NCBI RefSeq assembly: GCF_036971445.1
Contig: NC_091478.1
Location: forward strand, 62,930,001 to 62,994,000
From: Narcine bancroftii
Lineage: Eukaryota
DNA: 64,000 bases
Direction of reading: 5' to 3'
Part shown: one piece after another, positions 6,061 to 59,080 of the stretch
Position numbering within the stretch: the stretch's first letter is position 1
Layout of the letters: each line of letters opens with the position of its first letter
Made by a program: the position numbers and the translations under genes
The notes under the pieces: generated by a model
The model's database searches: none
Told to the model about the DNA's origin: nothing
Seen by the model: the letters and a program-made list of their open reading frames with translations, nothing else

Positions 6061-6108
6061 ATTTAACAGTGCTCCTTACTGCAAGGTCATTTGAATCCCC
6101 TATTCAGA

Positions 6109-6133
6109 ATGGTTCTCCTTCTGCTTCTCCGAG
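6109..6133 (+). CDS. Gene A exon 1: leader peptide MVLLLLLR
   Basis: ATG plus hydrophobic run, phase-1 donor G|GTAATA; 15 nt shorter than the gene B leader. Confidence 0.8.
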
Positions 6134-6249
6134 GTAATATTTAACCAGTACCATTTTGTTCCTTGTTCTACTTATTTAGTTCTCTCTCTTTATCTCCCAT
6201 CTCGATGCCGGCCTCACCGATTTAATTGCGCCATGTTACATTTTCTCAG

Positions 6250-6573
6250 CAGTTGCAGATCAGCGAGGTTTTCATGTAAATCAATTACCCAAAGAAACCA
6301 GTATACCAGTCGGGGGAAATGTTACCTTTTATTGTGTGTTGCCCATCATCCGCGACAAGTCCAGTGTGAAGGTCTACTGGTGGAAGGAGGGTGAGAATGC
6401 ATACCAACACAGCGATGTCGCCAATGGAAAACGATATGGTCTCCGAGGTAGAGCAAGTTGGTACTTTGAGTTGTGCAAAGCAACTGTCCAAGATTCTGGA
6501 GTATATCGCTGTTCCGTCATCGGTCCGGAAATGGTTGCAATCAATGGAAGTGGATCGCGTCTAATTGTTCACG
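6250..6573 (+). CDS. Gene A exon 2: Ig V-set domain, germline-joined VJ type
   Basis: Acceptor TTTTCTCAG and donor G|GTAAAT, phase 1-1, 324 nt. Translates AVADQRGFHVNQLPKETSIPVGGNVTFYCVLPIIRDKSSVKVYWWKEG...YFELCKATVQDSGVYRCSVIGPEMVAINGSGSRLIVH, with B-strand Cys, C-strand Trp, DSGxYxC and J-like GSGSRLIV. Confidence 0.95.
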
Positions 6574-7206
6574 GTAAATCATATTAACGGGAAAAGCAAA
6601 CAGCGAATAACTGTCTGAACAATAAGAAACGGAAAGGCTGGTAGACAGACCATGATTTGTCGATACCCCTCTACCCGCTCAATGAAGATGAGGAAGGCAG
6701 AGATTCTGCCGCCCGTCTCCCAACTCGTACAGTTCGCGGTTAAGTTCATGCCCGCCCGAAGAGTCTTTCTGCAACGTGGCACAAAGCTTTATGGATTCTC
6801 ATTTGTATTGTCTGGTATATTCACCATCCTCACCCAGGCCCCCATCCTATAACTATTTTGTCTGATGTGGATCAAACAACCTGCAAATAAAAGCATTCCT
6901 CAGCCATTCTATACTCAGACGATCATCGCTCCACCATTGTCCGAGTACATTGCGGGAATAATATCGCAAGTTATCAGTAGCAAAAAAACACCATTGAAAA
7001 TGGTGGAAGGAGAAGGCAACCACCCATTCACTCCCCCGCCCCGCACACTCACACACACCTTTAACCTTTCCCTTTTTAATTCGGCGGAGAAGCTCGTTCG
7101 TGCTCATTTTTGTTCATGGAATATTGGTTACTTCCCAATTACTTACAGGAAAGAATTAGTCCGCATTCTGTCTTTCTCACGCAACATTGACAGATTTGTT
7201 TCTTCT

Positions 7207-7452
7207 GGGGCTACACGGTAGGCAAAGCGGTTCGCGCAACGCTGTTAACAGAGGCAGCGACCGGGAACGGGGGTTCGACTCCCGCGCTTTCTCCCAGTGT
7301 CTGCGTGGATTTTTCTCCGGGCTCCGGTTTCCTCCCACAATTGAAAATGTACCAGAATCGTAGGTTAATTTCGTGTAATTGGGCTGCACGGACTTGTGGG
7401 CCGAAATGGCCTGTTATCGTGCTGTAACTTTAAATTTCAATTTTTAAATTTA
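7207..7452 (+). mobile_element. tRNA-derived V-SINE-type element
   Basis: tRNA-like head with B-box GGTTCGACTCC, central GCGTGG..TTCTCCGGGCTCCGGTTTCCTCCCAC, tail GGGCCGAAATGGCCTGTT. Related fragments on the minus strand near 5240-5380 and 39140-39280. Confidence 0.8.
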
Positions 7453-8252
7453 AGCCAGTGTTTGTAAAGTATGATTATTCATACAACACAATTAGTATCG
7501 CAATTTATTATCTTGTTATTAGAATGGAATATGATCCATTATGAATTAAACATTATATGTCTATTTCACATCCGTGACGTGAAATTACGGACCAATGTTC
7601 AATTTCCCAGCGAATCAAAATCCATCATTTTCATTAATTCCAACCGAAAGAAGGAGCTCGAAACCAATTCTTGTTTTGGAGAGTTTTTGCCGCTAACCAT
7701 CCCCAATGTACTAGTGTCATGTTAGTTTGAAAGGTTGCAAAGACAAAATATGCAACTTATATCATTGCAAAGAAACCACTGAATCCACTGTCCTTGCCTT
7801 GGATAAAGAAAGTAACACTACCTGTTGAGTAACAAAATTATTGGCTTTCTTTCAGCAATTGTTATGCCCAGGTTTTCAGTCTAATACTGCCCTCAGTAAC
7901 TCGCTTTATCATCTAAGACATGCGGAATATTCTTCGCTATCAGTGTGCAATAATCACGGAGGAGCTCTCATTATAAAATACCCCGACATCCTCGCACAAA
8001 GTGTTCTTAGTGGATTATTTGGATTACGAATGGGGAAAACGACTTTCTGACGGAGGGTTTGGTTCGGCCTGTATCCCAAATATTCAGATATGTTAGTTAA
8101 GTGAACAGATAACGACTTCTTCTGTTTTACGGGGGATTGGGATTTTCAAATAGCATAATTCGAATTAATAAATGAGACTGGGAAAGAATTGTTTTATAAT
8201 TTCCCAGTCATTGGATTAAATTAATTCAAATCTTTATTTACTCGTATTTCAG

Positions 8253-8549
8253 TGGCGCCAACTCCACTGAAAATCTACTCCAAGACTGTTGATGGGAATC
8301 CACTCACTAGACATGTTCTCGTATGCGAAACGGCTGCATTTTACCCGGAGAATCTCACCCTAATTTGGTACTGAAATGGAACGAAAATCACAGCGGGAAC
8401 TCATACAAGAAAAGAGAAGAACGCGGAGGGACTGTATGTAGTTTCCAGCGATTTAACCTACAGCAACGGCGAGGATCAATATGCCTGCAAGGTATATCAC
8501 CTCTCTCTCCAGACTCCAGCCGTTGCCAGGTATTCTGTTGCGAAACAAG
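8253..8549 (+). pseudogene. Gene A exon 3: Ig C1-set domain with in-frame TGA at 8372-8374
   Basis: Acceptor GTATTTCAG and donor G|GTATGT, phase 1-1, 297 nt. Translates VAPTPLKIYSKTVDGNPLTRHVLVCETAAFYPENLTLIWY*NGTKITAGTHTRKEKNAEGLYVVSSDLTYSNGEDQYACKVYHLSLQTPAVARYSVAKQ. C1 hallmarks: C..FYP, W, N.xG.Y, YxCxVxH. Confidence 0.92.
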
Positions 8550-9008
8550 GTATGTCGTCAACAGTCTAGTGAGTCGTGATTTGTTGTAAATGCCTTGATG
8601 CATTGTATAAATTCTTGCAGTTAATAATTCCGAAATTAAATCATTCAAATTCCATGGGGAAATATCGGATGGAGCATTGATTTCATTTCCAATTTGTAAA
8701 AGAAAACCTGTGCGTCTGAGGCATGGCCAGTCAAATGCCGTTGGCAATCATTTTTTCAAAAAATTGCTGCGCTACAAAAGCATAGAGATATTAATCGTTC
8801 ACGTTTTGTACCCACCTCATTATCATTAGGTTTCTTTTGTTTGCGATTTTAAGTGTGTCAGAGTTTTGCTCTACCACCATCTCTAAACTTCTTGACTTCA
8901 CGATGAAATGGCTGTCTTTTAAAGTATTTAACATTTGTTATAGTTCAAATAAAAATGATTAATCATCATAAGACAGATGAAATATTTAACGTTCCTGATT
9001 CATTTCAG

Positions 9009-15400: not shown

Positions 15401-15618
15401 TGCCTGTTTAATACTGGATGGCATCCATTCCCTTTTGCAGGAACCAATATGTTTCATCGCCAGCCTCTTAAAACACTTCTCTGTGGACGTGTGAGCCACT
15501 GGTCATTAGATTATTAATTGCATCCCAACTCCCACACATACATCAGCTCAGTTCTCAGTCATGGTAAACACAACCATTGTTTGGCCAATAATTCCATATT
15601 ATGCTGTTATTCTTTCAG

Positions 15619-15735
15619 ATTGTGTCTTCATACGTCCTTCCTTGTACATTAGATATGCTGTGGGTTTGACCTTTCTGTTCCTGGCCATCGTTTGCCTTAC
15701 CATTGGGGCGCGTAGTCAATTACCCATTTATAAAG
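15619..15735 (+). CDS. Activating-type transmembrane exon (Arg in TM, stalk Cys)
   Basis: Acceptor TTATTCTTTCAG and donor AAAG|GTACGT, phase 1-1, 117 nt. Translates DCVFIRPSLYIRYAVGLTFLFLAIVCLTIGARSQLPIYK. Confidence 0.8.
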
Positions 15736-16015
15736 GTACGTTAACTAACAGAATTCACTCTCATAGAAAATGCCATGGCATTACGATGGACAATGGGGAG
15801 AGGTTTTATATATATATATATATATATAGTGTGGAAAAATGAGATTTGATTATTATTTTAAATTGAAATTGTGCTGAGACTGGTAATTCTTCCAAAAATC
15901 AACCAATTTAGCATGCAGAATTATGCTATTAAGGGGCACTTGTTGCAGACACACATTTCTGTGAATCAGTGAATGCTTTAACTATGCTTTCTAATTCATC
16001 TCCACTGCTCTGCAG

Positions 16016-18736: not shown

Positions 18737-21007
18737 TTGAAGACTTTATTTAAAATTTTATAACATGAATACAATAAAGAATTACATTTAAAGAAAAATA
18801 AAAAAAATTAAAATAGTATGATTACAATATTACATCAGAAAACTACACAAACCCCCCCCCGTTAATTGTAACACAATATTAATAGTCGAACTTAAAATTA
18901 GTCCAACCCTCCCCCCCCAAAAAATAAAGTGTGAAGAGTTAATAAAATTAACAATATTATATATGGAAAAAATACCCACTTACAAAAAAAGAGATAAAAC
19001 TTAACCTAAAAAAAATTCTAACAACAAAAAAAAATTGTCAATACCACGCTTAAACATATATTTAAATCAAACTTAAATGCATATAATTAGCAAACAGAGT
19101 CCACTTTAACTTATAAAAAGACATCTTATCCTGAATTGAAAAAGATATCCTTTCCATAGTCAAACAAAATTTCATTTCCAAATACCACTTATCTAAAGTT
19201 AGTATATTTCTATCTTTCCAAGTAAGTACTATACATTTGTTAGCCACGACTAAAGCTAAATAGATAAATGAAATCTGATAATCCTCTAAACCTAAATCAA
19301 TTAATGATTGCATGTTCCCTAATAAAAATATATCGGGATCTAATACAAGATGAATATTATATAAACTGTTAAAAATAGATTGAATACCTTTCCAAAACTG
19401 TTGCAATCGATCACAAAGCCAAACAGTATGCAAAATAGTATTGGCCGTCTGATCACATCGAAAACAAGAATCCAACTTACTAAGACCAAATTTTTTAAAT
19501 TTCTCCGGCGTTAAATATAGCTGATGAATAAAATTATAATTAATCATCGCTAGTCTAGCATTAATTAATTTCCGAATACTATTCTGACAAATTTCCATCC
19601 AAGCTTCTTCAGCTATTTTATGTCCTAAATCTTTTCCCATTTCAACTTGTCTTTATCCCAGTATTTTTTACTATCAATTTCTTGTAAAATACAATACAAA
19701 TCAGATATATATCCCTTTTTTGGTATTGAAAGTACAAATTCTTCAAAACTAGATTCAGGCAATAAAATCATATGTCGACCACATAACTGTTTTACAAAAG
19801 ATTTTAATTGATAATATACAAATATAGAATTTGCACTAATACCATATTTCCTTTGTAATTCGTCAAAGGAACAAAAACAACCCTCACAAAAACAATCAGA
19901 TAAATTTTTTATTCCCTTCTTTTCCTATTGTTTCAAAGTGGCATTGGAGACCGTAAAAGGAACAAGTTGATTATTATATAATGGCAATCTTCCAGAATAT
20001 ATATTTTAAAGTCCCAATTTTTAAAATTTACTTGTCCATAAATTCAATAAATGTTTCAATATTGGTACATCATAAGTTCGTAATACATTTTTATTCCATC
20101 GAAACAAAAACTCATGAGGAAATATTTCTAAAATAACCGCCATTTCTATCTTTACCCAACTAGGTGGGTCGTCCATATTCATTAATGCACTAAGAAATGT
20201 GAATTGAGCTGCTTCATAATAATGCTGAAAATTCGGTAATCTTAAACCTCCAAATTGAAAATCCCACATCAATTTTCTCATTGCTACTCTGGGAAATTTT
20301 CCCTTCCATAAGAATTCTCTAATCGCTTTATATAAGTCCTTAAAAAAACTTTAAAAAAAAATAAGGAATTGATTGAAACAAATATTGTATGCTAGGAAAA
20401 ATGTTCCTCCCTAGTAAACCCAAAGGTAGATCCCTCCACCTAATCAAATCTAATTTAATCCTTTTTATTAAAGGAAAATAATTAATTGAATATAATTCTT
20501 GAAATTCTGTATTAACATTAATTCCTAAATATTTAATTTGTGTAGTCCACTTCAAATTTGTAATATTTTTATATACTGAATAATCATCTTTACAAATTGG
20601 CAAAATTTCACTTTTAGCCGAATTTACTTTGTAATCAGATAATTGGCCATAAATTTCTAAACATTCTTGAATTGCAGGTAAAGAAATATCTGGATCCACC
20701 AAATATAATAAAACATCATCAGCAAATAAATTAATCTTGTATTCCTCATTCAGAACTCTCATACCTTTAACATTTTCATTTTGACGTATTAATTGTGCTA
20801 AAGGTTCAATAACTATAGCAAATAAAGCAGGTGACAACGGACATCCTTGTCTAGTAGAACTTGTCAAACTAAAAGATTCTGAAATTTGGCCATTAACAGC
20901 AATTCTAGCCTTCGGGCTATTATATAAAGCCTTTATCAACCCAATAAATGAAGAACCAAAACAAAATTTCTCAAGTACTTTGAACAGAAACTTCCATTCC
21001 ACTCTGT
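18737..21007 (-). mobile_element. 5'-truncated L1-clade LINE
   Basis: RT RQGCPLSPALF and LFADD plus C-terminal CFRC..H..W.C. 17-bp TSD GGGATGAGTGCACAAGT at 18720-18736 and 21008-21024. Confidence 0.93.
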
Positions 21008-21545
21008 GGGATGAGTGCACAAGTGAGTCACACAGGGAGTGGTCCCGACAGAAGACAGAGAGGAAAGGAGAGGGGAAGATGTGTCTAGTGATGGGATCCT
21101 TTTGTAAGTGCCAAAAATTCTGGAGGATAATGTGTTGGATGCAGAGGCTGGTGGAGTGGTAGATGAGGATGAGGAGGGGTCCATGTTTGTTACATCAGGG
21201 GCAGAAGAGGCCAGGGCAGATGAGCAGGAAATGGAGGAGATTTGGGTGAGGGCTGAGTTGATGGTGGTGGGGGAGGTGGGGGGAGGGGGAGAGAGAACCA
21301 CGTTTGTGGAAGAAGACAGACATTTCAGAAGATCTGGACTGGAAGAAATTCATCTTGGGAACAGATACAGCAGAGACAGAGAAATTGAGAGAATGGGATA
21401 GAATTTTTGCTGGGGACAGAGTGAAATTAAGTGTAGTCAAGTTAGTTGTGGGAGTTAGAGGGTTTGTAATGTATGTCGGAGGAACACTTATCTCCCGAGA
21501 TGGAGACAGAGAGATCCAGGAAGGGGAGAGTGTTGTCCCAAGATG

Positions 21546-37424: not shown

Positions 37425-37712
37425 ATTGACCACCGCCAGTGGGCTGATATCGCCTCAAACCGTGCATCTTGGCGCCTCACAGTTCGGCGGGCAGCAACCT
37501 CCTTTGAAGAAGACCGCAGAGCCCACCTCACTGACAAAAGGCAAAGGAGGAAAAACCCAACACCCAACCCCAACCAACCAATTTTCCCCTGCAACCGCTG
37601 CAACCGTGTCTGCCTGTCCCGCATCGGACTTGTCAGCCACAAACGAGCCTGCAGCTGACGTGGACTTTTACCCCCTCCATAAATCTTCGTCGGCGAAGCC
37701 AAGCCAAAGAAT
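37425..37712 (+). mobile_element. Young RTE 3' end
   Basis: Near-identical to 17141-17425; ATCTTATT flanks both sides. Confidence 0.9.
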
Positions 37713-38910: not shown

Positions 38911-40010
38911 CGCGGTGACCGGATCCGATTCATCATCTCCTCGGGCAGTGAGTTCTACATATTAATGAATCTCCGTGTAAAAAAAAGGATCTTTCAGATC
39001 CCCTTGAAACCTTCCTCGCATCTTGAACCGATGCCCTCCCGTTCTTGATGATCCAACCGACGGAGTAAACCCAATCTGATTATCTACCCTCTCTGTTCTT
39101 CTCATCTCGGCCATATTTCTAACGATAAATATATATACATTTTAAATTTAGCACGGTAACAAGCCCTTTCTGCCCACCAGCGCGCGCCGCCCAATTTATT
39201 CACAATGAACCTATAAAACCCGGTACTTTTCGAACAGTGGGAGGAAGGAAACCATAGACCCGGGGAAAACCCACTCATTCAATGGACGGAAATTCTTTCT
39301 TGTTGCAGCCGAGTTGGTCCTCCGTAAAAAAAGTCACCCGTCCACATTCAATTAAAAAAGAGATAATAATTTCAAGCTGTAGTATGGGATTCGAGGACAA
39401 GAGGGCACAACTTCAGGATAAAAGGGCGTCAATTTAAGAGAAGCGGAATAGTTTCCTTTGCCAGAGGATGGTGAGTCTGTGGAATCCAGATCGTTGGGTA
39501 TATTTAAGGAAGACATTGGCAGGTATTTGATTAGTCAGGGCATCAAGGGTTACGGGGAGAAGACCTGAGAGTGGGGCTGAGTAGGTGGATGGATCAACTC
39601 ATGATAGAATAACGGAGAAGCCTCGATGGGCCTAATTCTGCTCCAAAATCTTGTTATCAATGTAAGAAGCATGATGTTTGAGCATTGCAGGATTAGTGGG
39701 AGAAGGGGGCGTTGTTTCGAGGGGAAATTCATCACAAATCATACTTTCTATATATTAAGTCGTCAAGGTGATTTCAGGAGGGCAAGAAATTAATGCATTT
39801 CAAACTCCTACTTTTCCCCTTCCTCAATTATCGATAGCAAACCCTGAAACGATGTCAACTATTTATTTTGAACATATAAATTCAACATTCCAACGTTCAC
39901 TTCCAGGATGTGATAAGCCCCGGCAACTCGTCATACAACCCAAACGTCAGACGTCGCTTCACATTTAACAGCGTTCCTGACTGCAAGGTCATTTGAATCC
40001 CTTGTGCAGA

Positions 40011-40050
40011 ATGTCAGGGACTGCGATTGTTCTCCTTCTGCTTCTCCGAG
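40011..40050 (+). CDS. Gene B exon 1: leader peptide MSGTAIVLLLLLR
   Basis: AGAATG context, hydrophobic core, phase-1 donor G|GTAATA. Confidence 0.85.
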
Positions 40051-40166
40051 GTAATATTTAACCAGTACCATTTTGTTCCTTGTTCTACTTATTTAGTTCT
40101 CTCTCTTTATCTCCCATCTCGATGCCGGCCTCACCGATTTAATTGCGCCATGTTACATTTTCTCAG

Positions 40167-40490
40167 CAGTTGCAGATCAGCGAGGTTTTCATGTAAATCA
40201 ATTACCCAAAGAAACCAGTATACCAGTCGGGGGAAATGTTACCTTTTATTGTGTGTTCCCCATCATCCGCGACAAGTCCAGTGTGAAGGTCTACTGGTGG
40301 AAGGAGGGTGAGAATGCATACCAACACAGCGATGTCGCCAATGGAAAACGATATGGTCTCCGAGGTAGAGCAAGTTGGTACTTTGAGTTGTGCAAAGCAA
40401 CTGTCCAAGATTCTGGAGTATATCGCTGTTCCGTCATCGGTCCGGAAATGGTTGCAATCAATGGAAGTGGATCACGTCTAATTGTTCACG
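40167..40490 (+). CDS. Gene B exon 2: VJ-type Ig V domain
   Basis: 324 nt. Differs from gene A at two positions by eye (CVF vs CVL, and a silent TCA/TCG); same splice sites. Confidence 0.95.
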
Positions 40491-40993
40491 GTAAATCATA
40501 TTAACGGGAAAGGCAAACAGCGAATAACTGTCTGAACAATAAGAAACGGAAAGGCTGGTAGATAGACCATGATTTGTCGATACCCCTCTACCCACTCAAT
40601 GAGGATGAGGAAGGCAGAGGTTCTGTCGCCCGTCACCCAACCCGTACAGTTCGCGTTTATGTTCATGCCCGCCCGAAGAGGCTCGCTGCAACGTGACACA
40701 AAGCTTTATGGATTCTCATTTGTATTGTCTAGTATATTCACCATCCTCACCCAGGCCCCCATCCTATAACTATTTTGTCTGATGTGGATCAAACAACCTG
40801 CAAATAAAAGCATTCCTCAGCCATTCTATATTCAGAAGATCATCGCTCCACCATTGCCTGAGTACCTTGCGGGAACAATATCACGTTATAAGTAGCAAAA
40901 GGGAACCATTGAAAATTGTGGAAGTAGAAGATAACCACCCATTCACTCCCCCCGCCCCATACACTCAATCATTATCTCTCTGTCTCTTTCTCT

Positions 40994-41151
40994 NNNNNNN
41001 NNNNNNNNNNNNNNNNNNNNNNNNNNNNNNNNNNNNNNNNNNNNNNNNNNNNNNNNNNNNNNNNNNNNNNNNNNNNNNNNNNNNNNNNNNNNNNNNNNNN
41101 NNNNNNNNNNNNNNNNNNNNNNNNNNNNNNNNNNNNNNNNNNNNNNNNNNN
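40994..41151. other. Assembly gap (158 N)
   Basis: N run. The collinear interval in copy A (about 7070-8436) is about 1.4 kb and includes the 5' part of the C1 exon. Confidence 0.99.
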
Positions 41152-41264
41152 TGTAGTTTCCAGCGATTTAACCTACAGCAACGGCGAGGATCAATATGCC
41201 TGCAAGGTATATCACCTCTCTCTCCAGACTCCAGCCGTTGCCAGGTATTCTGTTGCGAAACAAG
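41152..41264 (+). CDS. Gene B exon 3 (visible 3' part): C1-set domain
   Basis: VVSSDLTYSNGEDQYACKVYHLSLQTPAVARYSVAKQ, identical to 8437-8549; donor G|GTATGT. Confidence 0.9.
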
Positions 41265-41838
41265 GTATGTCGTTTAACAGTCCAGTGAGTCGTGATTTGT
41301 TGTAAATGCCTTGATTCATTGTATAAATTCTTGCAGTTAATAATTCCGAAATTAAATCATTCAAATTCCATGGGGAAATATAGGATGGAGCATTGATTTA
41401 ATTTCCAATTTGTATCAAAACCCTGTGCGTCTGAGGCATGGCCACTCAAATGCCGTTGGCAATCATTTTTTCAAAAAATTGCTGCGCTACAAAAGCATAG
41501 AGATATTAATCGTTCATGTTTCATACCCACCTCATTTTCATTAGGTTTCTTTTGTTTTCAATTTTAAGTGTGTCAGAGTTTTGCTCTACCACCATCTCTA
41601 AACTTCTTGTCCTTCTTGGAACTCTTAAATCTGCAGTTTGCTTTGCAAATTAATTTGGACTACATTCAATCAATTTAGAAACTTCGAGTATTAATTATGT
41701 GCACATCATTTGTTCTGTATTTATTGCTATTTTCATGTTCACTCGTGTACAGCGTAATTCCACCCAGTTGTGTTTCAGCCCTATTCTGACCGCTCCACTC
41801 ACAAATGGACAAAGAATGTGTTTAACATGAAAACCTAA

Positions 41839-42615
41839 TGTTACTGAGTCCAGAGGACCCCAAAAACTAGCAGCAATAAATATGCACCACAACACAGTGT
41901 TACTTCAACAAAAGTAGTTTTTACTTGTATTTGAACAATAAAACAGAATTGAACTTTAAATTATTACTTAAATTACCTAATAATTAATACCCCCCCTCCC
42001 CACCCCAATCCCTCTAATACTAAGCGCAGGTGTGTGTAATGTATATTTTAGATTAGAAAGGTTCTTTGGATCACAGTCCAATCTCACTGGTTGCAGGCAA
42101 TTCTTGTACTGTGCACAGATGTTTGCATTAGCAAAGTTCACCAGTCTTTGGTGCTTAGCAGGCAAATGGTTACCACTCAAGAGGGTTCTTGCTGGTTTTC
42201 AGTGATAGATTCCTTTTCTAGACATCCACAACTGATTCCTACTCAATCAGTCTTGCTGACGAACCTTGCCCCCTTTTGGGTTCTCCAGGTGATCCTCTTT
42301 CTTTCAGACCGCCAATCTCCGCCTCTGACCAGACAGCCTTCCAAAGTTTGCCAGCTGCTGCCCCTGGAACGGATTACTGTCTCCTCTCTCTCTGTTTCAC
42401 ATCATCGCTCTCTGAGAGCAACACTCTTCTCTGCCTGCAAAGATATCATAGTCTCCCAGGCAAGCTGCTAACGATACTTTATTGCCTCCTGCAAAGAGCA
42501 TTCTGAAATAGTCCTGCAAATAATCTATGTTTTAATGTGTGTGTGTGTGTGTATGTGTGTGTGTGCAAGCTGCTCTAAGAATTCCTCCCAAACCACCTGT
42601 GAATACTCTGTCACA
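41839..42615. mobile_element. Solo LTR (777 bp) in the C1-TM intron of gene B
   Basis: Starts TGTTAC and ends GTCACA; 4-bp TSD CTAA at 41835-41838 and 42616-42619; partial second copy at 4753-4990. Confidence 0.8.
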
Positions 42616-42652
42616 CTAACAAGTATAATAAATATTCCTTATAACTTTGCAG

Positions 42653-42766
42653 ATTCTCGCAATACACTCGCAAACTACCTGGTTCCTAGTGGCGTGGTGG
42701 TTGGATTACTGATTTTAGTGCTAATGATTGTTGTCGGGGTACGGTTGGGACGACAGGAACTTGAAG
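42653..42766 (+). CDS. Gene B exon 4: uncharged transmembrane segment
   Basis: Acceptor ATAACTTTGCAG and donor GAAG|GTAAGA, phase 1-1, 114 nt. Translates DSRNTLANYLVPSGVVVGLLILVLMIVVGVRLGRQELE. Confidence 0.9.
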
Positions 42767-44394
42767 GTAAGATCTGGATTGAACGCTCGATGTTACTGAA
42801 CACGGAAGAATTGTAAAATTCCTTTAATCTGTTGACAGCTTTGACAAACCGCCGGTCATCCTGAACGAGGAGTTGCCTCTTCTCGGTGACTGAACGTCCG
42901 TTCTCCTTTTCCCAATTCAGATTTTGCCTACTAAGAAGCAATAATGATTGCCATGTTCACCCTAGAACAACTGGAAGAAACTGCAGGGAACAGGATGAAC
43001 CACCAATCAAAGCCACATAATCTGGGAACTGAGAAGAATATGATGAATTCATTTCCAGTTCGACCGAACGCAAAAAGCCACCTCCATTCCATGTATGTTA
43101 CACGTGATGATATGGGAGAGCGACTGGTCTATGCGCTCAGAACAGGCTCAATGGCAATCGAGTGGCATCTAAGGATCGTAGCTCATGCATCCTTCGTTTA
43201 CGACCCTGTTTCTCCTGCAGTTTTGCACTTCACGTCAAACAGGTTTACACTTCATGAGCAGTTAATCCGTCAGGCAATGTGAAAAATATTCGACATTTGT
43301 GGCATTCACACCGGGATCAAGTTTTACAGAAAATATGGTTATAAAGCCGAACTCTGCAGATTATACTTGTGCACTTATGTTGTGAAAGCCAGACTCCCTG
43401 ACTACTTTCATGAAACGTCTGCAAATTTTAAGTAAAGACTCTCAACCAATCTCCTGCTGCTGAACATAACCCAACTCCATGCTCCAACACGGGGCAGAGG
43501 AATATTCTCTATCTCATTCTCCATCAAAGGAAACTCATCTAAGTGTATCCTAATCAGCTCTGCTTCAAATGAAGCTCCCGACCTGAAGAAGAGAATGTTC
43601 AAATTTCAATTCTGGCTCTGGTATAATATACTTTTAGATATCAGTGAGTTCTGCTCTAACCCGCACTTCAGATGTATGGTCGATTTTTTAAAATTAACTT
43701 GCAAACACTTAACAGATAATATGAATGCCCCAATAGGCTAACCAAACCAAAAGCCTTTTAAAACAATATCGTCACCAAAATCTAATTCAAACTCAAGCAA
43801 CATCAATATGTAGAGCTCGTGGTTCGTTTACCTATCACCAGTATCTCCAATGGAGCAGTCTATTCCGAAAGGCGCCCTTGAAAATAATTATCTGGAGCGT
43901 AAGGAAAATAACGCATGGATATTTTCAAAGCGTCCATGAAAACAGCTAACGTTGTGGCAGCTTCATTGCGATTCTGGCATTGAACGATCGAAACATTGTA
44001 AAGAATCACCCAAGAGTCTATGGTGTAAGGAAAAAAAGCTGGTTATCAGTCGGATACAGAAACAAAGGAAATAGTGCAAGCAGCAGGCAATCGTCCATGA
44101 CCCACAAGCTCACACACACAAACTGCCTGTGCAAAGCCTAAATCCACATTCGCTGCACCATTACCTCAGAAACGTACCTGCGGAGCAATGATTCAATTAC
44201 ATTTTCGACTTCAGTCCAATTAAAAAAATGTCATTTGATGGCATTGGTCGCCTTGTTAATGTTTTCCTTCATTTCGGAATTAAACAAAATACCACTGGTA
44301 AAATGAATTTGGGTTCGATTTGAGGATAGAAAAGATGTCACAATGCGAAATACGAAATATTTCCAGCATTTGTCCATTTCCCGAAATATATTTT

Positions 44395-45342
44395 AGAAAC
44401 ATAGAAACATAGAAGATAGGAGCAGGAGTAGGTCATTCGATCCTTCGAGCCTGCTCCGCCATTCAACGAGTATATTGGCTGATCTTAAAGTTCAGTACCC
44501 CGTCCCCGCCTTCTCTCCGTAACCTTTAATACCCTTATACTGAAGAAATATATCTAATTCCCTCTTAAATATATTTAATGAACCTGCCTCCACTGCCCTC
44601 TGTGGCAATGAATTCCACAGATTCACCACCCTCTGGGTAAAGAAATTCCTCCTCCTCTCGGTCCTAAATGGTTTGCCTATTATCCTCAAACCATGGCCCC
44701 GGGTTCTGGATTTTCCCATCATTGGAAACATCCCATCTGCATCCACTCTGTCCAGTCCTGCCAGAATTTTATATGTCTCTATGAGATACCCTCTCAATCT
44801 TCTAAACTCCAGCGAGTACAATCCCAATCTGCGCAATCTTTCCTCATAAGTCATTCCTGCCATTCCAGGTATCAGCCTGGTGAATCTCCTCTGCACTCCC
44901 TCCATTACAAGAACATCCTTCCTTAGATAAGGTGACCAAAACTGCACACAATACTCCAGGTGTGGTCTCACCAAGGCCCTGTACAACTGCAGTAAGGTAT
45001 TCTTGTTCCTATACTCAAACCCTCTTGATATGAAGGCCAACATACCATTTGCCTTTTTAACCGCCTGCTGTACCTGCATGCTCGCCTTCAGAGACTTGTG
45101 TACAAGTACCCCTAGGTCTCTCTGCACTTCCCCATCTCTTAATCTATTGCCATTCAAATAGTAATCTGCCCTCCGGTTTGTATTACCAAAGTGGATAACC
45201 TCACATTTATCCACATTGTAGTGCATTTGCCATGTATCTGCCCAGTCCCTCAATTTATCCAAATCACACTGGAGCTTCCTGACCCCCTCTTCCGTGCACA
45301 AAACCCCTCCGAGCTTAGTGTCGTCTGCAAATTTGGAGATAT
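44395..45342 (-). mobile_element. Young CR1 LINE 3' end in a gene B intron
   Basis: Uninterrupted ORF 44492-45301 (LYRALVRPHLEYCVQFWSP...FFTQRVVNLWNSLP) and (ATGTTTCT)n tail. Confidence 0.95.
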
Positions 45343-45399
45343 CCGCACTGCGAATGATGTTAAACGTTATAATGACATTAAAATTTCGCCTCTTTCAAG

Positions 45400-45443
45400 G
45401 TGAAGAGGAATGTGGGATGGAACCAAATGGCCACCAGGATCAG
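45400..45443 (+). CDS. Gene B exon 5: short cytoplasmic exon GEEECGMEPNGHQDQ
   Basis: Acceptor TTTCGCCTCTTTCAAG and donor CAG|GTATGT. Phase 1 to 0 bridges the TM exon and the terminal exon exactly. Confidence 0.7.
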
Positions 45444-45569
45444 GTATGTCCCTTCATTTATTCATACTGGTCAATGCTGGAAATGCCAAGAAATAGACTG
45501 AATTAGAGCGACTATATTCTGCTCACATTAGAAACTTTACGTATGTTTACCAGAAGTATTAATCGGATT

Positions 45570-46165
45570 CAGAATTTATTGTCATGATCAAGTCATGAAA
45601 TTCGGTATTTTGCAGCAGCATCTTAATGAGAACATGGATATAACCATCTTACGACATTACTATAAAAGTAAAAGAAAGTAATTAAAAACAAAAGTGCAAG
45701 GTAGGTATTTTGGATCATTAAACATTCAGGAATCTGATGGCAGCGGGGATCAAGCTGTCTTGTGCCGTTGAGAGCTCGACTTTAGGCTCCCGTACTTTTC
45801 GCAGATGGTAGTAGAGTGAATCTGGAATGGGCTGTGTGCTGGGTGGTGGGGGGTTCTTAAGGATTGAGGCAGTGTTTTTTTTTTAAAGACACCACCTCAT
45901 GTAGATGTCCGCGATGGTCCCAGACAGAGTTAACAACCCTCTGCAGTTTATTCTTGTCCTGAGAGTTAGTGTCTCCATACCAGGTAGTGATGCAACCAGC
46001 CAGAATGCTCTCCACGGTCCACTTGTGACATGCTCCTCAGACACCTCACAAAGTATAGCCGCTGGCGAACCTTCTTGGTGATTAGATCAACGTGGAGGCT
46101 CCAGGACAGATCCTTGGAGATGTTAACACCCAGGAATTTGAAGTTCTTGATCCGCTCCACAAATC
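45570..46165 (-). mobile_element. Rex1/Babar-like LINE 3' part
   Basis: VERIKNFKFLGVNISKDLSWSLHVDLITKKVRQRLYFVRCL. Confidence 0.8.
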
Positions 46166-46476
46166 CGGTCACAGAGGACTTTTCAAATGGTTATCACAAT
46201 GTCCTTGGTTTCAGCGTTTTCAAGTGTTAAATGTCTGATTAACAGATCAAGGTTCAGTAGCAGTGGTTAAATGTTGGAGATCGTCGCTCTTTGAAACTCT
46301 TCCAAAGTCAAAACTGATAGGTTTAAATAAAATATGATGTTCATCGTGCCATAATATTTGCAACTGTATCCATATATTTATACATGAACTCGTGTCCTTG
46401 ATCTCAAGCCCAGAGCAAACTATTTAAGGATTGACACGGACACTTAGTTGAATAATATTTTTGTCGAACTTTTCAG

Positions 46477-46827
46477 AGAGAAGAGAACAACATGGTACAT
46501 TATGTTGCAATACATTTCGACACGTCCAGGAAGGCCACAAAACAAAAACGTCTTGACGCAAGGCATGCTTTTGATCAGGTGAGTGTAAATAACGGTGTAG
46601 AGAGTTCATTAATTGGATACTATTTCTCAAGCATACGATTTGAGCAGCACATCCCAAAACAAATGAAAAAGCCAAATAGCAGTATTTTCTCAATTGCCTT
46701 TACAGAAAATGCAAGGGGAACCAGCACAGAGTATAGGATAAACTGCAAAGAGAGCACAGAATATGCGGAGGTGAAAACAAAAAAAGACCGCGGAGCAACA
46801 GAGGCGCTTTATTCAACAATAAGATAA
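46477..46827 (+). CDS. Gene B terminal cytoplasmic exon with ITIM/ITSM motifs
   Basis: Acceptor GAACTTTTCAG, phase 0, open to TAA. Translates REENNMVHYVAIHF...STEYAEVKTKKDRGATEALYSTIR*. VHYVAI fits ITIM, TEYAEV fits ITSM, ALYSTI is ITIM-like. Confidence 0.82.
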   Translation, partial: REENNMVHYVAIHFDTSRKATKQKRLDARHAFDQVSVNNGVESSLIGYYFSSIRFEQHIPKQMKKPNSSIFSIAFTENARGTSTEYRINCKESTEYAEVKTKKDRGATEALYSTIR

Positions 46828-46911
46828 ATATACCAGTCAGGCTGCAGTGGCGAAGACTCGTTTCTGACGTATTTCAATCGCAATCTGCTTCAAAATCAAC
46901 TTTTTGATGCT

Positions 46912-49900
46912 ATTTTTTGTAATTTTATTCAGTATCTGATTTAGTTTTTCCCAAAACGTATTAACTTTTGTACATACCAAAGTTGCATGTAATGTTGTTC
47001 CCATTTCCCTCTTACAGCAAAAACATCTATCCGATAAGGTTGAATCTCATTTAAAAATTTTTTGAGGAGTGATATATACCCTGTGTAACCAATTAAACTG
47101 TATCATGCGTAACCTTGTGTTTATTGTATTCTTCATAGTTCCAGAACAACTTTTCAAATACTTCATTTTTATCTTTATGTTTAGATCCTTTTCCCACTTC
47201 TGCTTAGGTTTATAATTTATTTCATTTTCCTTATCTTGCAGCTTAATGTACATGATGGTTATAAATCTTTTAATTTCCATTGTGTCTGTAATTACATTTT
47301 CAAAGCTGCTTCCTTCAGGTAATCTCAAGCTGTTTACCAATTTATCCTTTAAATAAGCTTTCAATTGATGATATGCAAACATTGTCCATGAGTTATCCCA
47401 TATTTGTACTTCAACTGTTCAAATGTTAATAAATTATTTCCCAAAAAATAATTTTCTATTCTTTTGATTCTTTTTCTCTCCCATTCTCTAAAGGAAAGGT
47501 TGTCTGTTGTAAACGGATCTGGCAGATTGAGGGTCAATAATAATTTTTATATTTGATAATTCGCTTTTTTTCCCTTTCTAAGTGGATCTTCTTCCATATA
47601 TTGTAAATGATGCAGTACTGGTGTGTTATCATATTGCACCAACTTTTCATCCCACTTATAAAGTATATGTTCCAGTACCTTCTCCCCTATTTTATCTAGT
47701 TCTATCTTAGTCCAGTCTAGTTTTTCCCTTGTCTGTTAAAAATCTGATAAATACCTTAATTGTGTTGCTCTATAATAATTTATAAAATTTGGTAACTGCA
47801 AACCACCTTGATTATACCTCTCTGCTAATTTATCTAATGCTACCTTTGATTTCCTCCCTTTCCACAAGAATTTCCTTATTATTCTCTTTAGTTCATTAAA
47901 GAACTTTTCTGTTAAAAGAATTGGTAATGTTTGAAATAAGTATTGTATTCTTGGGAACACGTTCATTTTAATGCAGTTCACCCTCCCTATCAACATTAGG
48001 GGTAATTCTTTTCAATGTTCTAAGTCTTCCTGCAATTTCTTTATTAGTGGCTGATAATTTAGTTTGTATAAGTGGCTTAAGTTATTATCTAACCTGATCC
48101 TAGGTATCGGATTGCTTGTGCTTGCCATCTAAATGGTGATTCTTTGTTAACTTCTGTATAGTCTGCAATACTCACTGGAATCACTTCACTTTTATTTCAT
48201 TGATCTTGTAACCTGATATTTCTCCAAATTCCATCAATTTCTTATGAAATTCTTTTACTGATAACTCTGGTTCTGTTAGGTATACTATGATGTCATCTGC
48301 AAAAAAGCTGATTTTATACTCCTTCTCCTTTTCTTTAATCATTTTTATTTTATTTTCTATTCTTATCAGTTCTGCCAAAGTTTCTATTGCTAAGGCGAAC
48401 AATGAGGGGCATAGTGGACATCCCTGTCTAGTTGACCTACTTAATTTAAAGTGACTCGATACATATCAATTTACTGCTACCTTCGCCAATGGTCCATTAT
48501 ACAATGCTATAATCCAATTTATATATTTTTTTCCTGTAGATTGAACTTCTGTAATACTTTAAGTAAGTAGTTCCACTCTACTCTGTCAAAGGCTTTTTCT
48601 GCATTCTAGAGCAACAGCCACTGTTGGTTTCTTATTTCCTTAAACTGCATGGATTAGATTAATAAGTTTACAGACATTGTCCACTGTTTGTCTTTTCTTA
48701 ATAAATCTAGTTTGATCTAGTTTTACTATTTTAGGAACACAGTCAGCCAATCTGTTAGCTAATAATTTCACTATTATCTTATAGTCTAAATTAAGTAGAG
48801 ATATTGGTCTATATGATGTTGGTGTTAATGAGTCCTTTCTAATCTTTGGTATTAATTTGTTTTCATAATTTAATTTATATAAAAATTGATAATTAACATT
48901 CAAAATTATACCCAGATATTTGATTCGATCAGTCCACTTCAAATTAATAATATTCTTATAAACTGAATAATCTCCTTCACTTACCGGTAACATTTCACTT
49001 TTTTCCCAAAAAACTTTATATCCAGAAAGACATCCATTTTGTATTAAACATTCCTTCAAATGCAAAGGTGACTGAGGTTGGTTTATTAAATACACCAATA
49101 CATCATCAGCAAATAAATTAATTTTATACTCCTCATCTAAAACTTTCATACCTTGTATCTGTGTATTTTGTCTTATCAACTGTGTTAAAGGTTCAATCAC
49201 TAACACAAACAAAGCTGATGATAAAGGAAAATCTTGATGAGTTGATTGAGTTAACTTAAAAGATTCTGAAATCAAACCATTCCTCAATATTCTAGCCAGC
49301 AGTTTACTATATAGAGACCTAATCCAACTAATAAAAGAAGGACCAAATTTAAATTTCTCCAAAACTTTAAATAAAAAATTCCATTCAACTCTATCAAATG
49401 CTTTTTATACATCTAAGGATATCACCATCGGATGATCATTAAACTAATCATGCGAAAAATGTTATCTGAAGCATAATTATTCTTTATAAAACCTGTTTGA
49501 TCAATATGAATCAACTTTGGTAAAAGTTTAGCCAATCTATTCGCTAATTCTTTAGCTATTATTTTATAATCTACATTTAACAACGAAAGTGATCTATATG
49601 AAGATACTTTCAAAGGATCTCTACCTTTTTTTTAGGAATTACTGTAATTAAAGCACCAGAACAAGACTCAGGTAAATCATGAAGTTCTCCAACTTGATGT
49701 GATACATCCCCAAACACAGAAGATAAATCATCATAAAAGATTTATAAAACTAAACCGAAAATCTATCATCACCATGAGACTTACCATTCGCCAATTCCAG
49801 CATAGCCATTTTAATTTCTGAATCAGTAAATGGTTCTTCTAACTCCTGTATATCTCCATCCTCTACTATTGGTAAATTCAACTGTGATTTTAAAAAATCA

Positions 49901-56689: not shown

Positions 56690-59080
56690 ATGTGTAGTGG
56701 GAGGTAGCAGTCGCTGGCCTATCACAATCATCTGCTTTATCTTCTCCAGGATGATTCTCAGGTTGTTTCTCTTGCACTATTTCACAAGATTCCCCCCCCA
56801 CCCCCGCCCTCTTCTCTGTAGTGCGACTCATCATTGTTGCTGATCAGACTAAGCACTGTCGTGTCATCCAAAAACTCTGTTGGAGCTGGATCTGACACTG
56901 CTGTTGTATGTCCATAGGGTAAAGAAGTGCAGACTGAGCACACAGCTCTCAGCTGAGAGCCAGTTCTCAGCATGATGGTGTTCCACGTTCTGCTTCAGTC
57001 CCGAACAGTCTTCTTTCCTTAAGGAGTCCAGAATCCAGTTAGATGGAGGGGTGATGAGTTCCAGCGAGGTCAACTTGCCACTAATCTTTGGAGTAGATTG
57101 TACTAAACGCCGAGCTGAAGTAAATGTACAGCACTTAGCATATATTGTTCTCCAGATGGGTCAAGGTGGAGTGATTTTCAATCAATTGCTTTCTCAAAAT
57201 AGGCTGTGATGCAACCAGTCAGTATGCTTTCCACGGTGCACCTGCGGAACTTTGATATCTTCTTCTTTGGCTTGGCTTCGCGAATGAAGATTTATGGAGG
57301 GGGTAAATGTCCACGTCAGCTGCAGGCTCGTTTGTGGCTGACAAATCCGATGCGGGACAGGCAGACATGGTTGCAACGGTTGCAGAGGAAAATTGGTTGG
57401 TTGGGGTTGGGTGTTGGGTTTTTCTTCCTTTGTCTTTTGTCAGTGAGGTGGGCTCTGCGGTCTTCTTGAAAGGAGGTTGCTACCCTCCGAACTGTGAGGC
57501 GCCAAGATGCACGGTTTGAGGCAATATCAGCGCACTGGCGGTGGTCAATGTGGCAGGCACCAAGAGATTTCTTTAGGCAGTCCTTGTACCTCTTCTTTGG
57601 TGCATTCTGTCACGGTGGCCAGTGGAGGGCTCACCATATAACACGATCTTGGGAAGGCGATGGTTCTCCATTCTGGAGACGTGACCCACCCAGCGCAGCT
57701 GGATCTTCAGCAGCACGGACTCGATGCTTTCGGCCTCTGCCATCTTGAGTACTTCGACGTTAGGGATGAAGGCGCTCGAATGAATGTTGAGGATGGAGCG
57801 GAGACAACGCTGGTGGAAGCGTTCTAGGAGCCATAGGTGATGCCGATAGAGGACCCATGATTTGGAGCCGAACAGGAGTGTGGGTATGACAACGGCTCTG
57901 TATACGCTTATCTTTGTGAGGTTTTTCAGTTGGTTGTTTTTCCAGACTCTTTTGTGCAGTCTTCCAAAGGCGCTATTTGCCTTGGCGAGTCTGTTGTCTA
58001 TCTCGTTGTCGATCCTTGCATCTGATGAAATGGTGCAGCCGAGATAGGTAAACTGGTTGACTGTTTTGAGTTTTGTGTGCCCGATGGAGATGTGGGGGGG
58101 CTGGTAGTCATGGTGGGGAGCTGGCTGATGGAGGACCTCAGTTTTCTTCAGGCTGACTTCCAGGCCAAACATTTTGGGAGTTTCCGCAAAACAGGACATC
58201 AAGCGCTGAAGAGCTGGCTCTGAATGGGCAACGAAAGCGGCATCGTCTGCAAAGAGTAGTTCACGGACAAGTTTCTCTTGTGTCTTGGTGTGAGCTTGCA
58301 GATGCCTCAGATTGAAGAGACTGCCATCCGTGAGGTACCAGATGTAAACAGCATCTTCATTGTTGACGTCTTTCATGGCTTGGTTCAGCATCATGCTGAA
58401 GAAGATTGAAAAGAGGGTTGGTGCGAGACCACAGCCTTGCTTCATGCCATTGTTAATGGAGAAGGGTTCAGAGAGCTCATTGCTGTATCTGACCCGACCT
58501 TGTTGGTTTTCGTGCAGTTGAATAACCATGTTGAGGAACTTTGGGGGCATCCGATGCCAAAGCCCTTTCCTGCTCACGGTGTCGAAGGCTTTGGTGAGGT
58601 CAACAAAGGTGATGTAGAGTCCTTTGATATATAATTTGATGATATACCAGATATCTAGACATTTTAGAAAGTATAGGCATTGGTATGCCTTCAAGTTTGT
58701 CTCGAAGCATTGCTCTGGGAGAGCCCTTCTAATATATGGACTTCAAGGAACTTGAAGGTATTAAGTCTCTCCACCTCTGTCCCATCTATAGGGTCTGGCA
58801 TGTGATCTATCGGCTTCCCCCTTTCTATTATCAAACTCTTTGGTCTTAATGATGTTGAGAGCAGGAATGTGGTTGTGGCACCACCCATTCATATTCCTGA
58901 CCTTTATTTTGACATTATTTCCAGTTATCTGGCCAACCAAGGGGAGTCTCAGCAACTTTATAGACTGTGATGCAGATGCATTTGTCTACACAGTCCACAA
59001 GAAATAAAGCAGGGGCCCTTGGGTGACCTTGAATTGATGGTCAGCGAGGAGGATGTACCAATCTGTCTTTTCCTATGCCA
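56690..59080 (-). mobile_element. Rex1/Babar-like RT fragments interrupted by an RTE
   Basis: EFLDDTTVLSLISNNDESHYREE and IDGTEVERLNTFKFLEVHI; probably more than one copy. Confidence 0.65.
57259..58621 (-). mobile_element. Young RTE LINE, about 1.4-kb 3' portion
   Basis: FVDLTKAFDTV..GMKQGCGLAPTLF..ELLFADD..SHKRACS; TSD CTTTGATAT at 57250-57258 and 58622-58630. Confidence 0.94.

What the first reader, a model, noticed from the sequence alone, without database searches (positions are those of the whole stretch)
40011..46827. Gene B: TCR-chain-like ectodomain wired to a SIRP/Siglec/PD-1-style inhibitory tail
Six-exon model (40011-40050, 40167-40490, gap-41264, 42653-42766, 45400-45443, 46477-46827) with junction phases 1,1,1,1,0 fitting without adjustment. 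The tail has an ITIM, then an ITSM, then a terminal YSTI, the order typical of SHP-recruiting receptors. Mammalian SIRP-alpha has V-C1-C1; only one C1 is visible here, though the gap could hide more.
Basis: partly seen in the sequence, partly recalled or inferred. Interest (0 to 1): 0.85.

Follow-up and report, generated by a model that had tools for sequence, protein, structure and literature searches.

The report
Electric-ray inhibitory receptor, truncated tail

Summary
Gene B is real. It is already a RefSeq model of Narcine bancroftii (XP_069755607.1 / XP_069755609.1, "uncharacterized protein"). RNA contigs from four runs of one study show the joints C1>TM, TM>exon 5 and exon 5>exon 6.

A 127-nt GT..AG intron (46579-46705) is spliced out in all four runs, with no depth inside it. 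The frame then shifts and the protein ends ...HAFDQKMQGEPAQSIG, stop at 46739-46741. Only the ITIM VHYVAI (46495-46512) is translated. TEYAEV and LYSTI lie out of frame in the 3' UTR. They are the family's true coding frame: a near-identical Narcine paralogue protein, probably the neighbouring downstream gene, carries them. One extra copy of a 10-nt unit at 46712-46723 would reproduce that paralogue's tail exactly.

The gap hides the C1 acceptor and about 184 nt of the C1 exon, so C1 integrity and the V>C1 joint are untestable here. A C1-skipped V-TM form also seems to be made.

The gene belongs to a chondrichthyan-wide VJ-C1-TM family with ITIM/ITSM tails, auto-named "SIRP-alpha-like" and several other things. 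This scan had already reached the same family reading on the neighbouring gene.

The parts
40011..40050 (+). Leader exon (MSGTAIVLLLLLR + 1 nt, phase 1)
   Evidence: ATG and donor GAG|gtaata. Identical to the N-terminus of RefSeq models P0002 and P0124. The leader>V joint was not covered by the reads I laid.
40167..40490 (+). V-set exon with an in-exon J-like strand (NGSGSRLIVH). Tandem acceptor at 40167 or 40170.
   Evidence: Pfam V-set E 9.7e-8. 100% match to P0002 residues 14-120. 99.4% identical to gene A's V exon 6250-6573. Fold model pLDDT 85.
40599..40732 (+). ORF in intron 2 resembling the first exon of the paralogue model P0134. Possible alternative first exon; not shown to be used in gene B.
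   Evidence: tblastn of P0134 residues 1-44 at 86% identity. Phase-1 donor A|gtatat.
40994..41151 (.). Assembly gap. Hides the rest of intron 2, the C1 acceptor and about 184 nt of the C1 exon.
   Evidence: N run. Collinearity with gene A, which has 1,385 bp in the equivalent interval.
41152..41264 (+). 3' 113 nt of the C1-set exon (...YACKVYHLSLQTPAVARYSVAKQ, phase 1)
   Evidence: Translation. 100% identical to gene A 8437-8549. Joined to the TM exon in the X3 contig.
42653..42766 (+). Stalk + transmembrane exon, with no charged residue in the membrane span
   Evidence: Translation. Joints on both sides seen in RNA contigs.
45400..45443 (+). Cytoplasmic exon (GEEECGMEPNGHQDQ), phase 1 to 0
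   Evidence: Joints 42766>45400 and 45443>46477 in all four runs.
46477..46578 (+). Cytoplasmic exon carrying the ITIM VHYVAI (46495-46512)
   Evidence: Aligns with the membrane-proximal ITIM column of the family.
46579..46705 (+).
   Evidence: GT..AG joint in one contig of each of the four runs; no depth inside. The RefSeq models splice it the same way.
46706..46741 (+). Last coding stretch KMQGEPAQSIG + TAA. The 3' UTR runs on past 46900.
   Evidence: C-terminus of P0002 and P0124.
46712..46723 (+). Site of the 10-nt copy-number difference from the paralogue (unit CAAGGGGAAC, or a rotation of it)
   Evidence: An in-silico tandem copy reproduces P0134's last 50 residues exactly. The paralogue's DNA was not seen.
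46742..46827 (+). Out-of-frame relic of the family's distal tail (TEYAEV 46756-46773, LYSTI 46807-46821), now in the 3' UTR
   Evidence: The same residues are in frame in P0134.

Best explanation
Gene B is a transcribed member of a multigene family of type I membrane receptors found across cartilaginous fishes. Family members have a leader, a germline-joined V domain with a J-like strand, one C1-set domain, an uncharged TM segment and a tyrosine-motif tail.

Shown: the mRNA is spliced L-V-(C1)-TM-cyt1-cyt2-cyt3. After the 127-nt last intron is removed, the tail is about 66 residues long and holds a single ITIM (VHYVAI).

Inferred: the distal motifs carried by the paralogue (TEYRIN, the ITSM TEYAEV, LYSTI) are lost to a 10-nt copy-number difference in the last exon.

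Inferred from what is established for ITIM receptors: a still unknown ligand on the V face leads to Src-family phosphorylation of the ITIM tyrosine and docking of an SH2 phosphatase (SHP-1/SHP-2 or SHIP), which damps activation. A lone ITIM cannot engage both SH2 domains of SHP-1/2. Gene B should therefore signal more weakly or differently than the intact paralogue, or act as a low-signalling ligand sink.

A form that skips C1 (V joined directly to TM, as in the RefSeq models) is probably also made.
For: Exon coordinates, phases and splice sites.

RNA contigs matching gene B with no differences show C1>TM, TM>exon 5, exon 5>exon 6a and exon 6a>exon 7, with no coverage of the 127-nt intron.

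The independent RefSeq models P0002 and P0124 end ...KMQGEPAQSIG.

Paralogue P0134 has the same TM and tail at 97-98% identity, with RGTSTEYRINCKESTEYAEVKTKKDRGATEALYSTIR in frame. A 10-nt tandem copy at 46712-46723 converts gene B's reading into exactly that tail.

Family: 44 representatives at E<=1e-10. The V-C1 relatives whose names I looked up are all chondrichthyan (chimaera, sharks, rays). Alignment A1 places VHYVAI in the family's proximal ITIM column and TEYAEV in the distal TEYAE(V/I) column.

C1 skipping: X4's contig has 134 nt upstream of the TM exon while X4 shows zero depth on the C1 tail. Models P0101 and P0102 from one of the family's other hits (species not looked up) are identical except for C1.
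Against: No functional data exist; ligand, cell type and phosphatase are all inferred.

The four runs are one study, and their RNA status is a guess by the tool. The GT..AG joints make DNA very unlikely. They may come from the individual that was assembled, so a polymorphic 10-nt site is not excluded.

The V>C1 joint cannot be observed. The hidden C1 part could carry a defect like gene A's TGA.

A tail that is out of frame yet identical in residues to the paralogue could mean a very recent loss, that is, a gene starting to decay rather than an adapted variant.
Confidence: 0.6

Rival explanations
1. Gene B is a decaying duplicate. It is still transcribed, but the frameshifted tail, and possibly a damaged C1 hidden in the gap, leave it without a selected function. 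The intact paralogue would be the working gene.
For: The tail is out of frame relative to the family. Neighbour gene A already has an in-frame TGA in C1 at 8372-8374. C1-tail coverage appears lower than TM-exon coverage in three of four runs (a weak measure). Only two proteins in 5.8 billion share this tail, so it is a young, local duplication.
Against: V, TM and the ITIM exon are all open. The V exon is kept 99-100% identical to gene A's while flanks are 75-93% identical. Contig depth reaches about 270-390 in run X1. The stop is in the last exon, so nonsense-mediated decay is not expected. Single-ITIM receptors are known to work (FcgRIIB, from general knowledge).
Confidence: 0.28
2. One reading: one continuous last exon 46477-46827 is translated, giving ITIM, then ITSM TEYAEV, then terminal YSTI in a single 116-residue stretch.
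For: The frame is open across 46477-46827. The distal motifs are real family motifs.
Against: All four runs splice out 46579-46705, with zero depth inside it. Both RefSeq isoforms do the same. The 42 intron-encoded residues (VSVNNG...IAFT) have no counterpart in the paralogue or the family.
Confidence: 0.04
3. Assembly artefact: the 5' half of gene B is a misplaced copy of gene A, joined across the gap to an unrelated TM and tail.
For: A gap sits inside the gene. The V exon and C1 tail are 99.4-100% identical to gene A's.
Against: The flanks differ from gene A (75-93% upstream, about 96% downstream of C1), so these are two loci. An RNA contig joins the C1 tail to gene B's TM exon and on to gene B-specific exon 6a. 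RefSeq joins this leader and V to this TM.
Confidence: 0.03

Closest known systems
Chondrichthyan 'SIRP-like' VJ-C1 receptors. RefSeq models are auto-named PTPNS1-like, SIRP-beta-1-like, tapasin-related-like, NCR3LG1-like, Ig lambda-like or FcRn-like. Examples: Callorhinchus XP_007902825, Mustelus XP_078066559, Hypanus XP_059849417.
   Same: Same exon plan and domain order. V is 35-54% identical. Shared J-like NG(T/S)GSxLxV strand, 'PTPL' C1 start in the paralogue, the Y-x-C-x-V-x-H C1 hallmark, an uncharged TM and a proximal ITIM in the same alignment column.
   Different: Gene B's mRNA lacks the distal LTYAAL / TEYAE(V/I) motifs because of the frame shift. The second tyrosine (RTVYAQT in relatives) is Phe here (HAFDQ). 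There is an extra Cys in the V E-strand region (FELCKA).
Narcine paralogue protein P0134 (RefSeq 'IgG receptor FcRn large subunit p51-like').
   Same: The C1 tail, TM and exon 5 are identical in residues. Exon 6a differs at two residues. The last 40 residues match gene B's out-of-frame reading exactly.
   Different: It has the full ITIM...TEYRIN...TEYAEV...LYSTI tail in frame and an intact C1 (WYRNG). Its model starts in the V-C1 intron and has no V.
Mammalian SIRP-alpha (PTPNS1/SHPS-1)
   Same: A V with a J-like strand followed by C1. The family profile aligns with SIRP-alpha D1-D2 in one stretch (2wng, E 3.8e-28). ITIM-type tail, and paired genes with near-identical ectodomains.
   Different: One C1 instead of two. 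One translated tyrosine motif instead of four. In a single-sequence PDB search, no SIRP entry appears among the 60 listed hits for the V domain; IgNAR V and PD-L1 lead that list. CD47 binding is unknown.
UrIg / UrIg2 (non-rearranging shark antigen-receptor relatives; PMC12227049)
   Same: Germline-joined VJ exon, split leader and C1-set constant domain. The family profile hits UrIg2 (9dmx) at E 2.7e-34.
   Different: UrIg has three C domains, and nurse-shark UrIg2 has nine. The terms ITIM and ITSM do not occur in that paper's text. UrIg is conserved and MHC-linked. This family is a fast-evolving tandem array with one C1.
Shark IgNAR variable domain
   Same: Best sequence match in the PDB (2i24, E 4.6e-5) and best Foldseek match (E 1e-8, TM about 0.7). 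Short W-to-C span (44 residues).
   Different: About 23-30% identity only. TCR V-beta, PD-L1, NCAM and CD79b score within tenfold. No rearrangement signals.
Teleost NITRs and other paired ITIM/charged-TM IgSF families (from general knowledge and PMC2442602)
   Same: V with a J-like strand in one exon. Multigene clusters. Mostly inhibitory ITIM tails with fewer activating members.
   Different: The second NITR domain, where present, is not C1-set. No sequence comparison was made here.

Membership tests
Chondrichthyan SIRP-like VJ-C1 receptor family | V-set domain with a J-like G-x-G-(S/T)-x-L-x-V strand encoded in one exon | tested here: met
   GSGSRLIV ends the V exon, and no recombination signal splits it.
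Chondrichthyan SIRP-like VJ-C1 receptor family | A single C1-set domain (PTPL start, FYP, W, Y-x-C-x-V-x-H) | tested here: inconclusive
   Only the last 37 residues (YACKVYH) are readable. The rest lies in the gap. An RNA contig joins this part to TM.
Chondrichthyan SIRP-like VJ-C1 receptor family | Uncharged TM followed by a proximal ITIM in the family's column | tested here: met
Chondrichthyan SIRP-like VJ-C1 receptor family | Distal (L/V)TYAAL and TEYAE(V/I) motifs in frame (inhibitory subtype) | tested here: not met
   They are out of frame in the spliced mRNA but in frame in paralogue P0134.
SIRP-alpha (mammalian) | V-C1-C1 three-domain ectodomain | tested here: not met
   Only V and one C1 exon are found in gene A and gene B with family proteins as probes. 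The relatives I aligned or inspected have at most one C1.
SIRP-alpha (mammalian) | Four cytoplasmic tyrosines forming two SHP-binding pairs | tested here: not met
   One ITIM is translated.
SIRP-alpha (mammalian) | Binds CD47 through the V domain | not testable with these tools
   No binding assay was possible, and no complex prediction was attempted.
TCR / Ig antigen-receptor chain | V and J separated by recombination signals and joined by RAG | tested here: not met
   V and the J-like strand are contiguous in exon 40167-40490.
TCR / Ig antigen-receptor chain | Charged TM residues for CD3 or CD79 assembly, and a very short tail | tested here: not met
   The TM span GVVVGLLILVLMIVVGV is uncharged, and the tail is about 66 residues with an ITIM.
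UrIg / UrIg2 | VJ followed by three or more C1 domains | tested here: not met
   Single C1. Architecture taken from PMC12227049.

The most novel reading that the evidence does not exclude
This chondrichthyan-only array of non-rearranging VJ-C1 receptors is an undescribed lineage whose short V domain is the closest germline-joined relative of the IgNAR/NAR-TcR V. In it, slippage at a 10-nt unit in the last exon switches individual copies between a full ITIM+ITSM tail (the paralogue) and a single-ITIM tail (gene B). That would be a simple way to diversify signalling strength within a paired-receptor cluster.
Probability: 0.1. Interest if true: 0.6.

Novelty: new member of a known kind. Interest (0 to 1): 0.3.

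Why it matters
For this gene the result is mostly corrective. The striking ITIM-ITSM-YSTI "checkpoint" tail is not what the mRNA encodes, and the gene is already in RefSeq as an uncharacterized protein.

The wider point is modest but real. Cartilaginous fishes carry a large, fast-evolving family of antigen-receptor-shaped, non-rearranging VJ-C1 receptors with inhibitory tails. Databases hold it only under contradictory automatic names. My five searches of the open literature found no paper describing it.

Such families bear on how paired inhibitory and activating receptors arose, and on where rearranging receptors came from. The A/B/paralogue cluster shows exon-centred homogenisation and a clean example of tail loss by a small indel.

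Tried and rejected

2. Second C1 hidden in the gap: rejected on collinearity with gene A and on the family architecture.

3. UrIg or UrIg2 membership: rejected on domain number.

4. Specific TCR likeness: not supported.

6. Searching for more proteins with this tail, to decide which state is ancestral: only P0134 and P0002 were found, so the direction is unresolved. The paralogue's spacing between 'QG' and the next tyrosine (8 residues) is close to the family's (7). That weakly favours a deletion in gene B.

7. Literature: five searches found no description of this family. The library misses most subscription journals, for example Fu et al. 2019 on PRARP, so this is not proof of absence.

8. 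I sent no self-joined spliced protein to any search tool. Full-length searches used the database's own proteins P0002 and P0134. Exons were searched by reference. The only joining was a local translation in a script.

9. The gap was neither filled nor looked up.

10. Read laying covered 41152-46900 only (one call allowed), so the leader>V and V>TM joints rest on the RefSeq models and on an unplaced 134-nt contig end.


Full report
**What is there**

The window is vertebrate DNA rich in retroelement fragments (reverse-transcriptase ORFs). The V exon translation is 100% identical to residues 14-120 of protein P0002. P0002 is RefSeq XP_069755609.1, and its isoform P0124 is XP_069755607.1. Both are "uncharacterized protein" of the lesser electric ray Narcine bancroftii, on a 108.75-Mb contig. 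Gene B therefore already has an automatic gene model.

**Exon check**

- leader, 40011-40050
- V exon, 40167-40490
- readable C1 part, 41152-41264
- TM exon, 42653-42766
- exon 45400-45443

The V acceptor is a tandem CAG|CAG. The two RefSeq isoforms differ by exactly that alanine. The V exon is a Pfam V-set domain (E 9.7e-8) and ends in a J-like strand, NGSGSRLIVH. The C1 fragment carries the hallmark YACKVYH. The TM span is uncharged.

**The gap (tested first, as asked)**

The two sides of the N run (40994-41151) align collinearly and in the same orientation with gene A. Region 39025-40967 matches 5126-7051, and 41152-41609 matches 8437-8894. Gene A has 1,385 bp between those anchors, whereas gene B shows 184 bp. 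The gap is therefore probably about 1.2 kb longer than written. It hides the rest of intron 2, the C1 acceptor and roughly the first 184 nt of a 297-nt C1 exon; compare gene A's exon 8253-8549.

The reading frame of the visible 113 nt is fixed by its phase-1 donor and by an RNA contig (below). Whether the hidden part is open is unknown. Gene A has TGA at 8372-8374 there.

No second C1 is expected. Family proteins used as probes find only one V and one C1 exon in gene A and gene B. The relatives I aligned or inspected have at most one C1.

**RNA evidence**

One sequencing study holds this stretch: four runs kept as contigs. The tool only guesses that they are RNA. Laid on 41152-46900 they show clean GT..AG joints, so they are spliced RNA.
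- Joint 42766>45400 appears in all four runs.
- Joint 45443>46477 appears in all four runs.
- X3 record 14 runs from the C1 tail (41152-41264) straight into the TM exon and on to the 3' UTR, without a single differing letter.

It skips 127 nt, 46579-46705 (CAG|gtgagt ... ttacag|AAAA), in all four runs. The mean depth of the bin 46528-46719 equals what the 65 exonic bases alone would give. In X1, 65 x 390.9 / 192 = 132.3, and 132.3 is observed. The intron therefore has no coverage. By contrast, the larger introns do show faint unspliced signal in X1.

The contigs carry gene B's own residues in exon 6a (N and V, where the paralogue has S and I). They have no insertion in the last exon.

**Consequence for the tail**

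With that intron removed the frame shifts by one. The protein ends ...RLDARHAFDQ|KMQGEPAQSIG, with stop TAA at 46739-46741. This is exactly the C-terminus of the RefSeq models.

The translated tail is about 66 residues and has one ITIM, VHYVAI (46495-46512). TEYAEV (46756-46773) and LYSTI (46807-46821) lie in the 3' UTR in another frame.

**The distal motifs are nevertheless real family sequence**

A second Narcine protein, P0134, lies on the same 108.75-Mb contig and is auto-named "FcRn large subunit p51-like". P0134 has an intact C1 and an identical TM and exon 5. Its tail reads ...HAFDQKMQGEPRGTSTEYRINCKESTEYAEVKTKKDRGATEALYSTIR.

In a script, copying a 10-nt unit once in tandem at 46712-46723 (CAAGGGGAAC or a rotation) turns gene B's reading into exactly P0134's last 50 residues. 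Gene B and the paralogue thus differ by ten bases at this point, and everything downstream is identical in residues.

The direction of change is open. The paralogue's spacing fits the family slightly better, which weakly favours a deletion in gene B. Only these two proteins share this tail in the 5.8-billion-protein collection.

**C1 inclusion**

The RefSeq models join V directly to TM. That may partly be forced by the gap. However, X4's gene B contig has 134 further letters upstream of the TM exon, while X4 shows zero depth on the C1 tail. X2's contig also breaks exactly at the TM exon's start.

Elsewhere in the family, models P0101 and P0102 are identical except that one lacks C1. The C1 exon is phase 1 on both sides, so skipping keeps the frame. 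Both V-C1-TM and V-TM products are therefore likely.

The V>C1 joint cannot be observed in this assembly. Contig depths hint that C1-containing forms are the minority in three runs. The tool warns that such depths are a poor measure, so I give this little weight.

**The family**

HMMER against 1.84 billion representatives gave 44 hits at E<=1e-10. The V-C1 relatives whose names I looked up all come from cartilaginous fishes: Callorhinchus, Scyliorhinus, Mustelus, Heptranchias, Heterodontus, Hypanus, Hemitrygon, Pristis and Mobula.

Their automatic names conflict with one another: PTPNS1-like (that is, SIRP-alpha-like), SIRP-beta-1-like, tapasin-related-like, NCR3LG1-like and Ig lambda-like. 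The two non-chondrichthyan hits whose names I looked up, a turtle and a lizard protein, carry pIgR-like and titin-homolog names.

Alignment A1 shows a conserved plan:
- V with NG(T/S)GSxLxV
- C1 beginning (V/A)PTPL
- TM
- a tail of repeated units: proximal (V/L)xYAxL, then RTVYAQTKQG, then LTYAAL, then TEYAE(V/I)

Other members have short tails and an acidic residue at the inner end of the TM. These are candidate activating partners.

A profile of the family hits Fab chains, UrIg2 (9dmx) and SIRP-alpha D1-D2 (2wng, one stretch across V and C1), all strongly. The layout is therefore generic "antigen-receptor/SIRP-like" rather than TCR-specific.

The V domain alone is nearest shark IgNAR V, both by sequence and by Foldseek on a model with pLDDT 85. 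The margins over TCR V-beta, PD-L1, NCAM and CD79b are small.

**Local context**

Gene A (leader at about 6109, V 6250-6573, C1 8253-8549) is a tandem copy about 34 kb upstream. Identity to gene B varies along the gene:
- 75-93% upstream of the leader
- 99-100% across the 3' leader intron and the V exon
- 100% across the C1 tail
- about 96% after the C1 tail

This is the pattern expected from exon-centred gene conversion. Gene A lacks gene B's TM and tail exons.

**Mechanism**

Shown: gene structure, transcription, splicing and the encoded sequence.

Inferred from established ITIM biology: tyrosine phosphorylation of VHYVAI and recruitment of an SH2 phosphatase. Signalling should be weaker than in the paralogue because the second docking site is missing.

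The main rival is that gene B is simply beginning to decay.

**Literature**

UrIg and UrIg2 (PMC12227049, PMC10751288) are the described non-rearranging shark VJ-C1 genes. They have three to eleven C domains, and the terms ITIM and ITSM do not occur in the UrIg2 paper's text. Five searches found no paper on the present family, but the library lacks most subscription journals.

**Earlier notes of this scan**

A follow-up on the neighbouring downstream gene reached the same family reading. My results agree with it. They add that gene B differs from that neighbour by the tail frameshift.

**Verdict**

This is a real, expressed and already auto-annotated gene. The exon model is right except for the last exon. 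The headline tail is not encoded. It is an ordinary member of an interesting but unnamed family.

Noticed in passing
window 39025-41609 versus 5126-8894: Identity between genes A and B is 75-93% upstream. It rises to 99-100% over the 3' leader intron plus the V exon (40075-40524) and to 100% over the C1 tail, then falls again. This looks like exon-centred homogenisation (gene conversion) between tandem copies about 34 kb apart.
   Followed up: partly
window 40599-40732 (+): An ORF in the V-C1 intron (MRMRKAEVLSPV...FVLS, phase-1 donor) is 86% like the N-terminus of the paralogue's RefSeq model. It could be an alternative first exon giving a V-less C1-TM-tail product, or a modelling artefact.
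   Followed up: no
window 8372-8374 (+): Gene A's C1 exon has an in-frame TGA where the paralogue protein has Arg (WY*NG versus WYRNG). This is consistent with a CGA>TGA change.
   Followed up: partly
window 15561-15842 (+): An ORF downstream of gene A contains a hydrophobic stretch with an Arg (...LAIVCLTIGARSQ...). Family proteins used as tblastn probes do not hit it.
   Followed up: no
window 1765-3006, 20343-21020, 48643-49362, 57576-58694 (all -): Reverse-transcriptase (and, in the first, RNase H) ORF fragments of retroelements. The repeats inside gene B's introns (about 41730-42500 and 44220-46340) are very abundant in the RNA contigs.
   Followed up: partly
window 37425-37711: A 287-nt repeat is present in at least six copies in the window: this one and five others, at 17141, 26700, 33020, 34278 and 57263, at 92-98% identity and in both orientations. 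It is probably a SINE.
   Followed up: no
proteins P0012, P0032, P0075, P0076, P0110 (other species): Family members with short tails and an Asp or Glu followed by His at the inner end of the TM (for example IIIMDHF, IIVEHLK, IIVDHV). These may be the activating counterparts of the ITIM forms.
   Followed up: no
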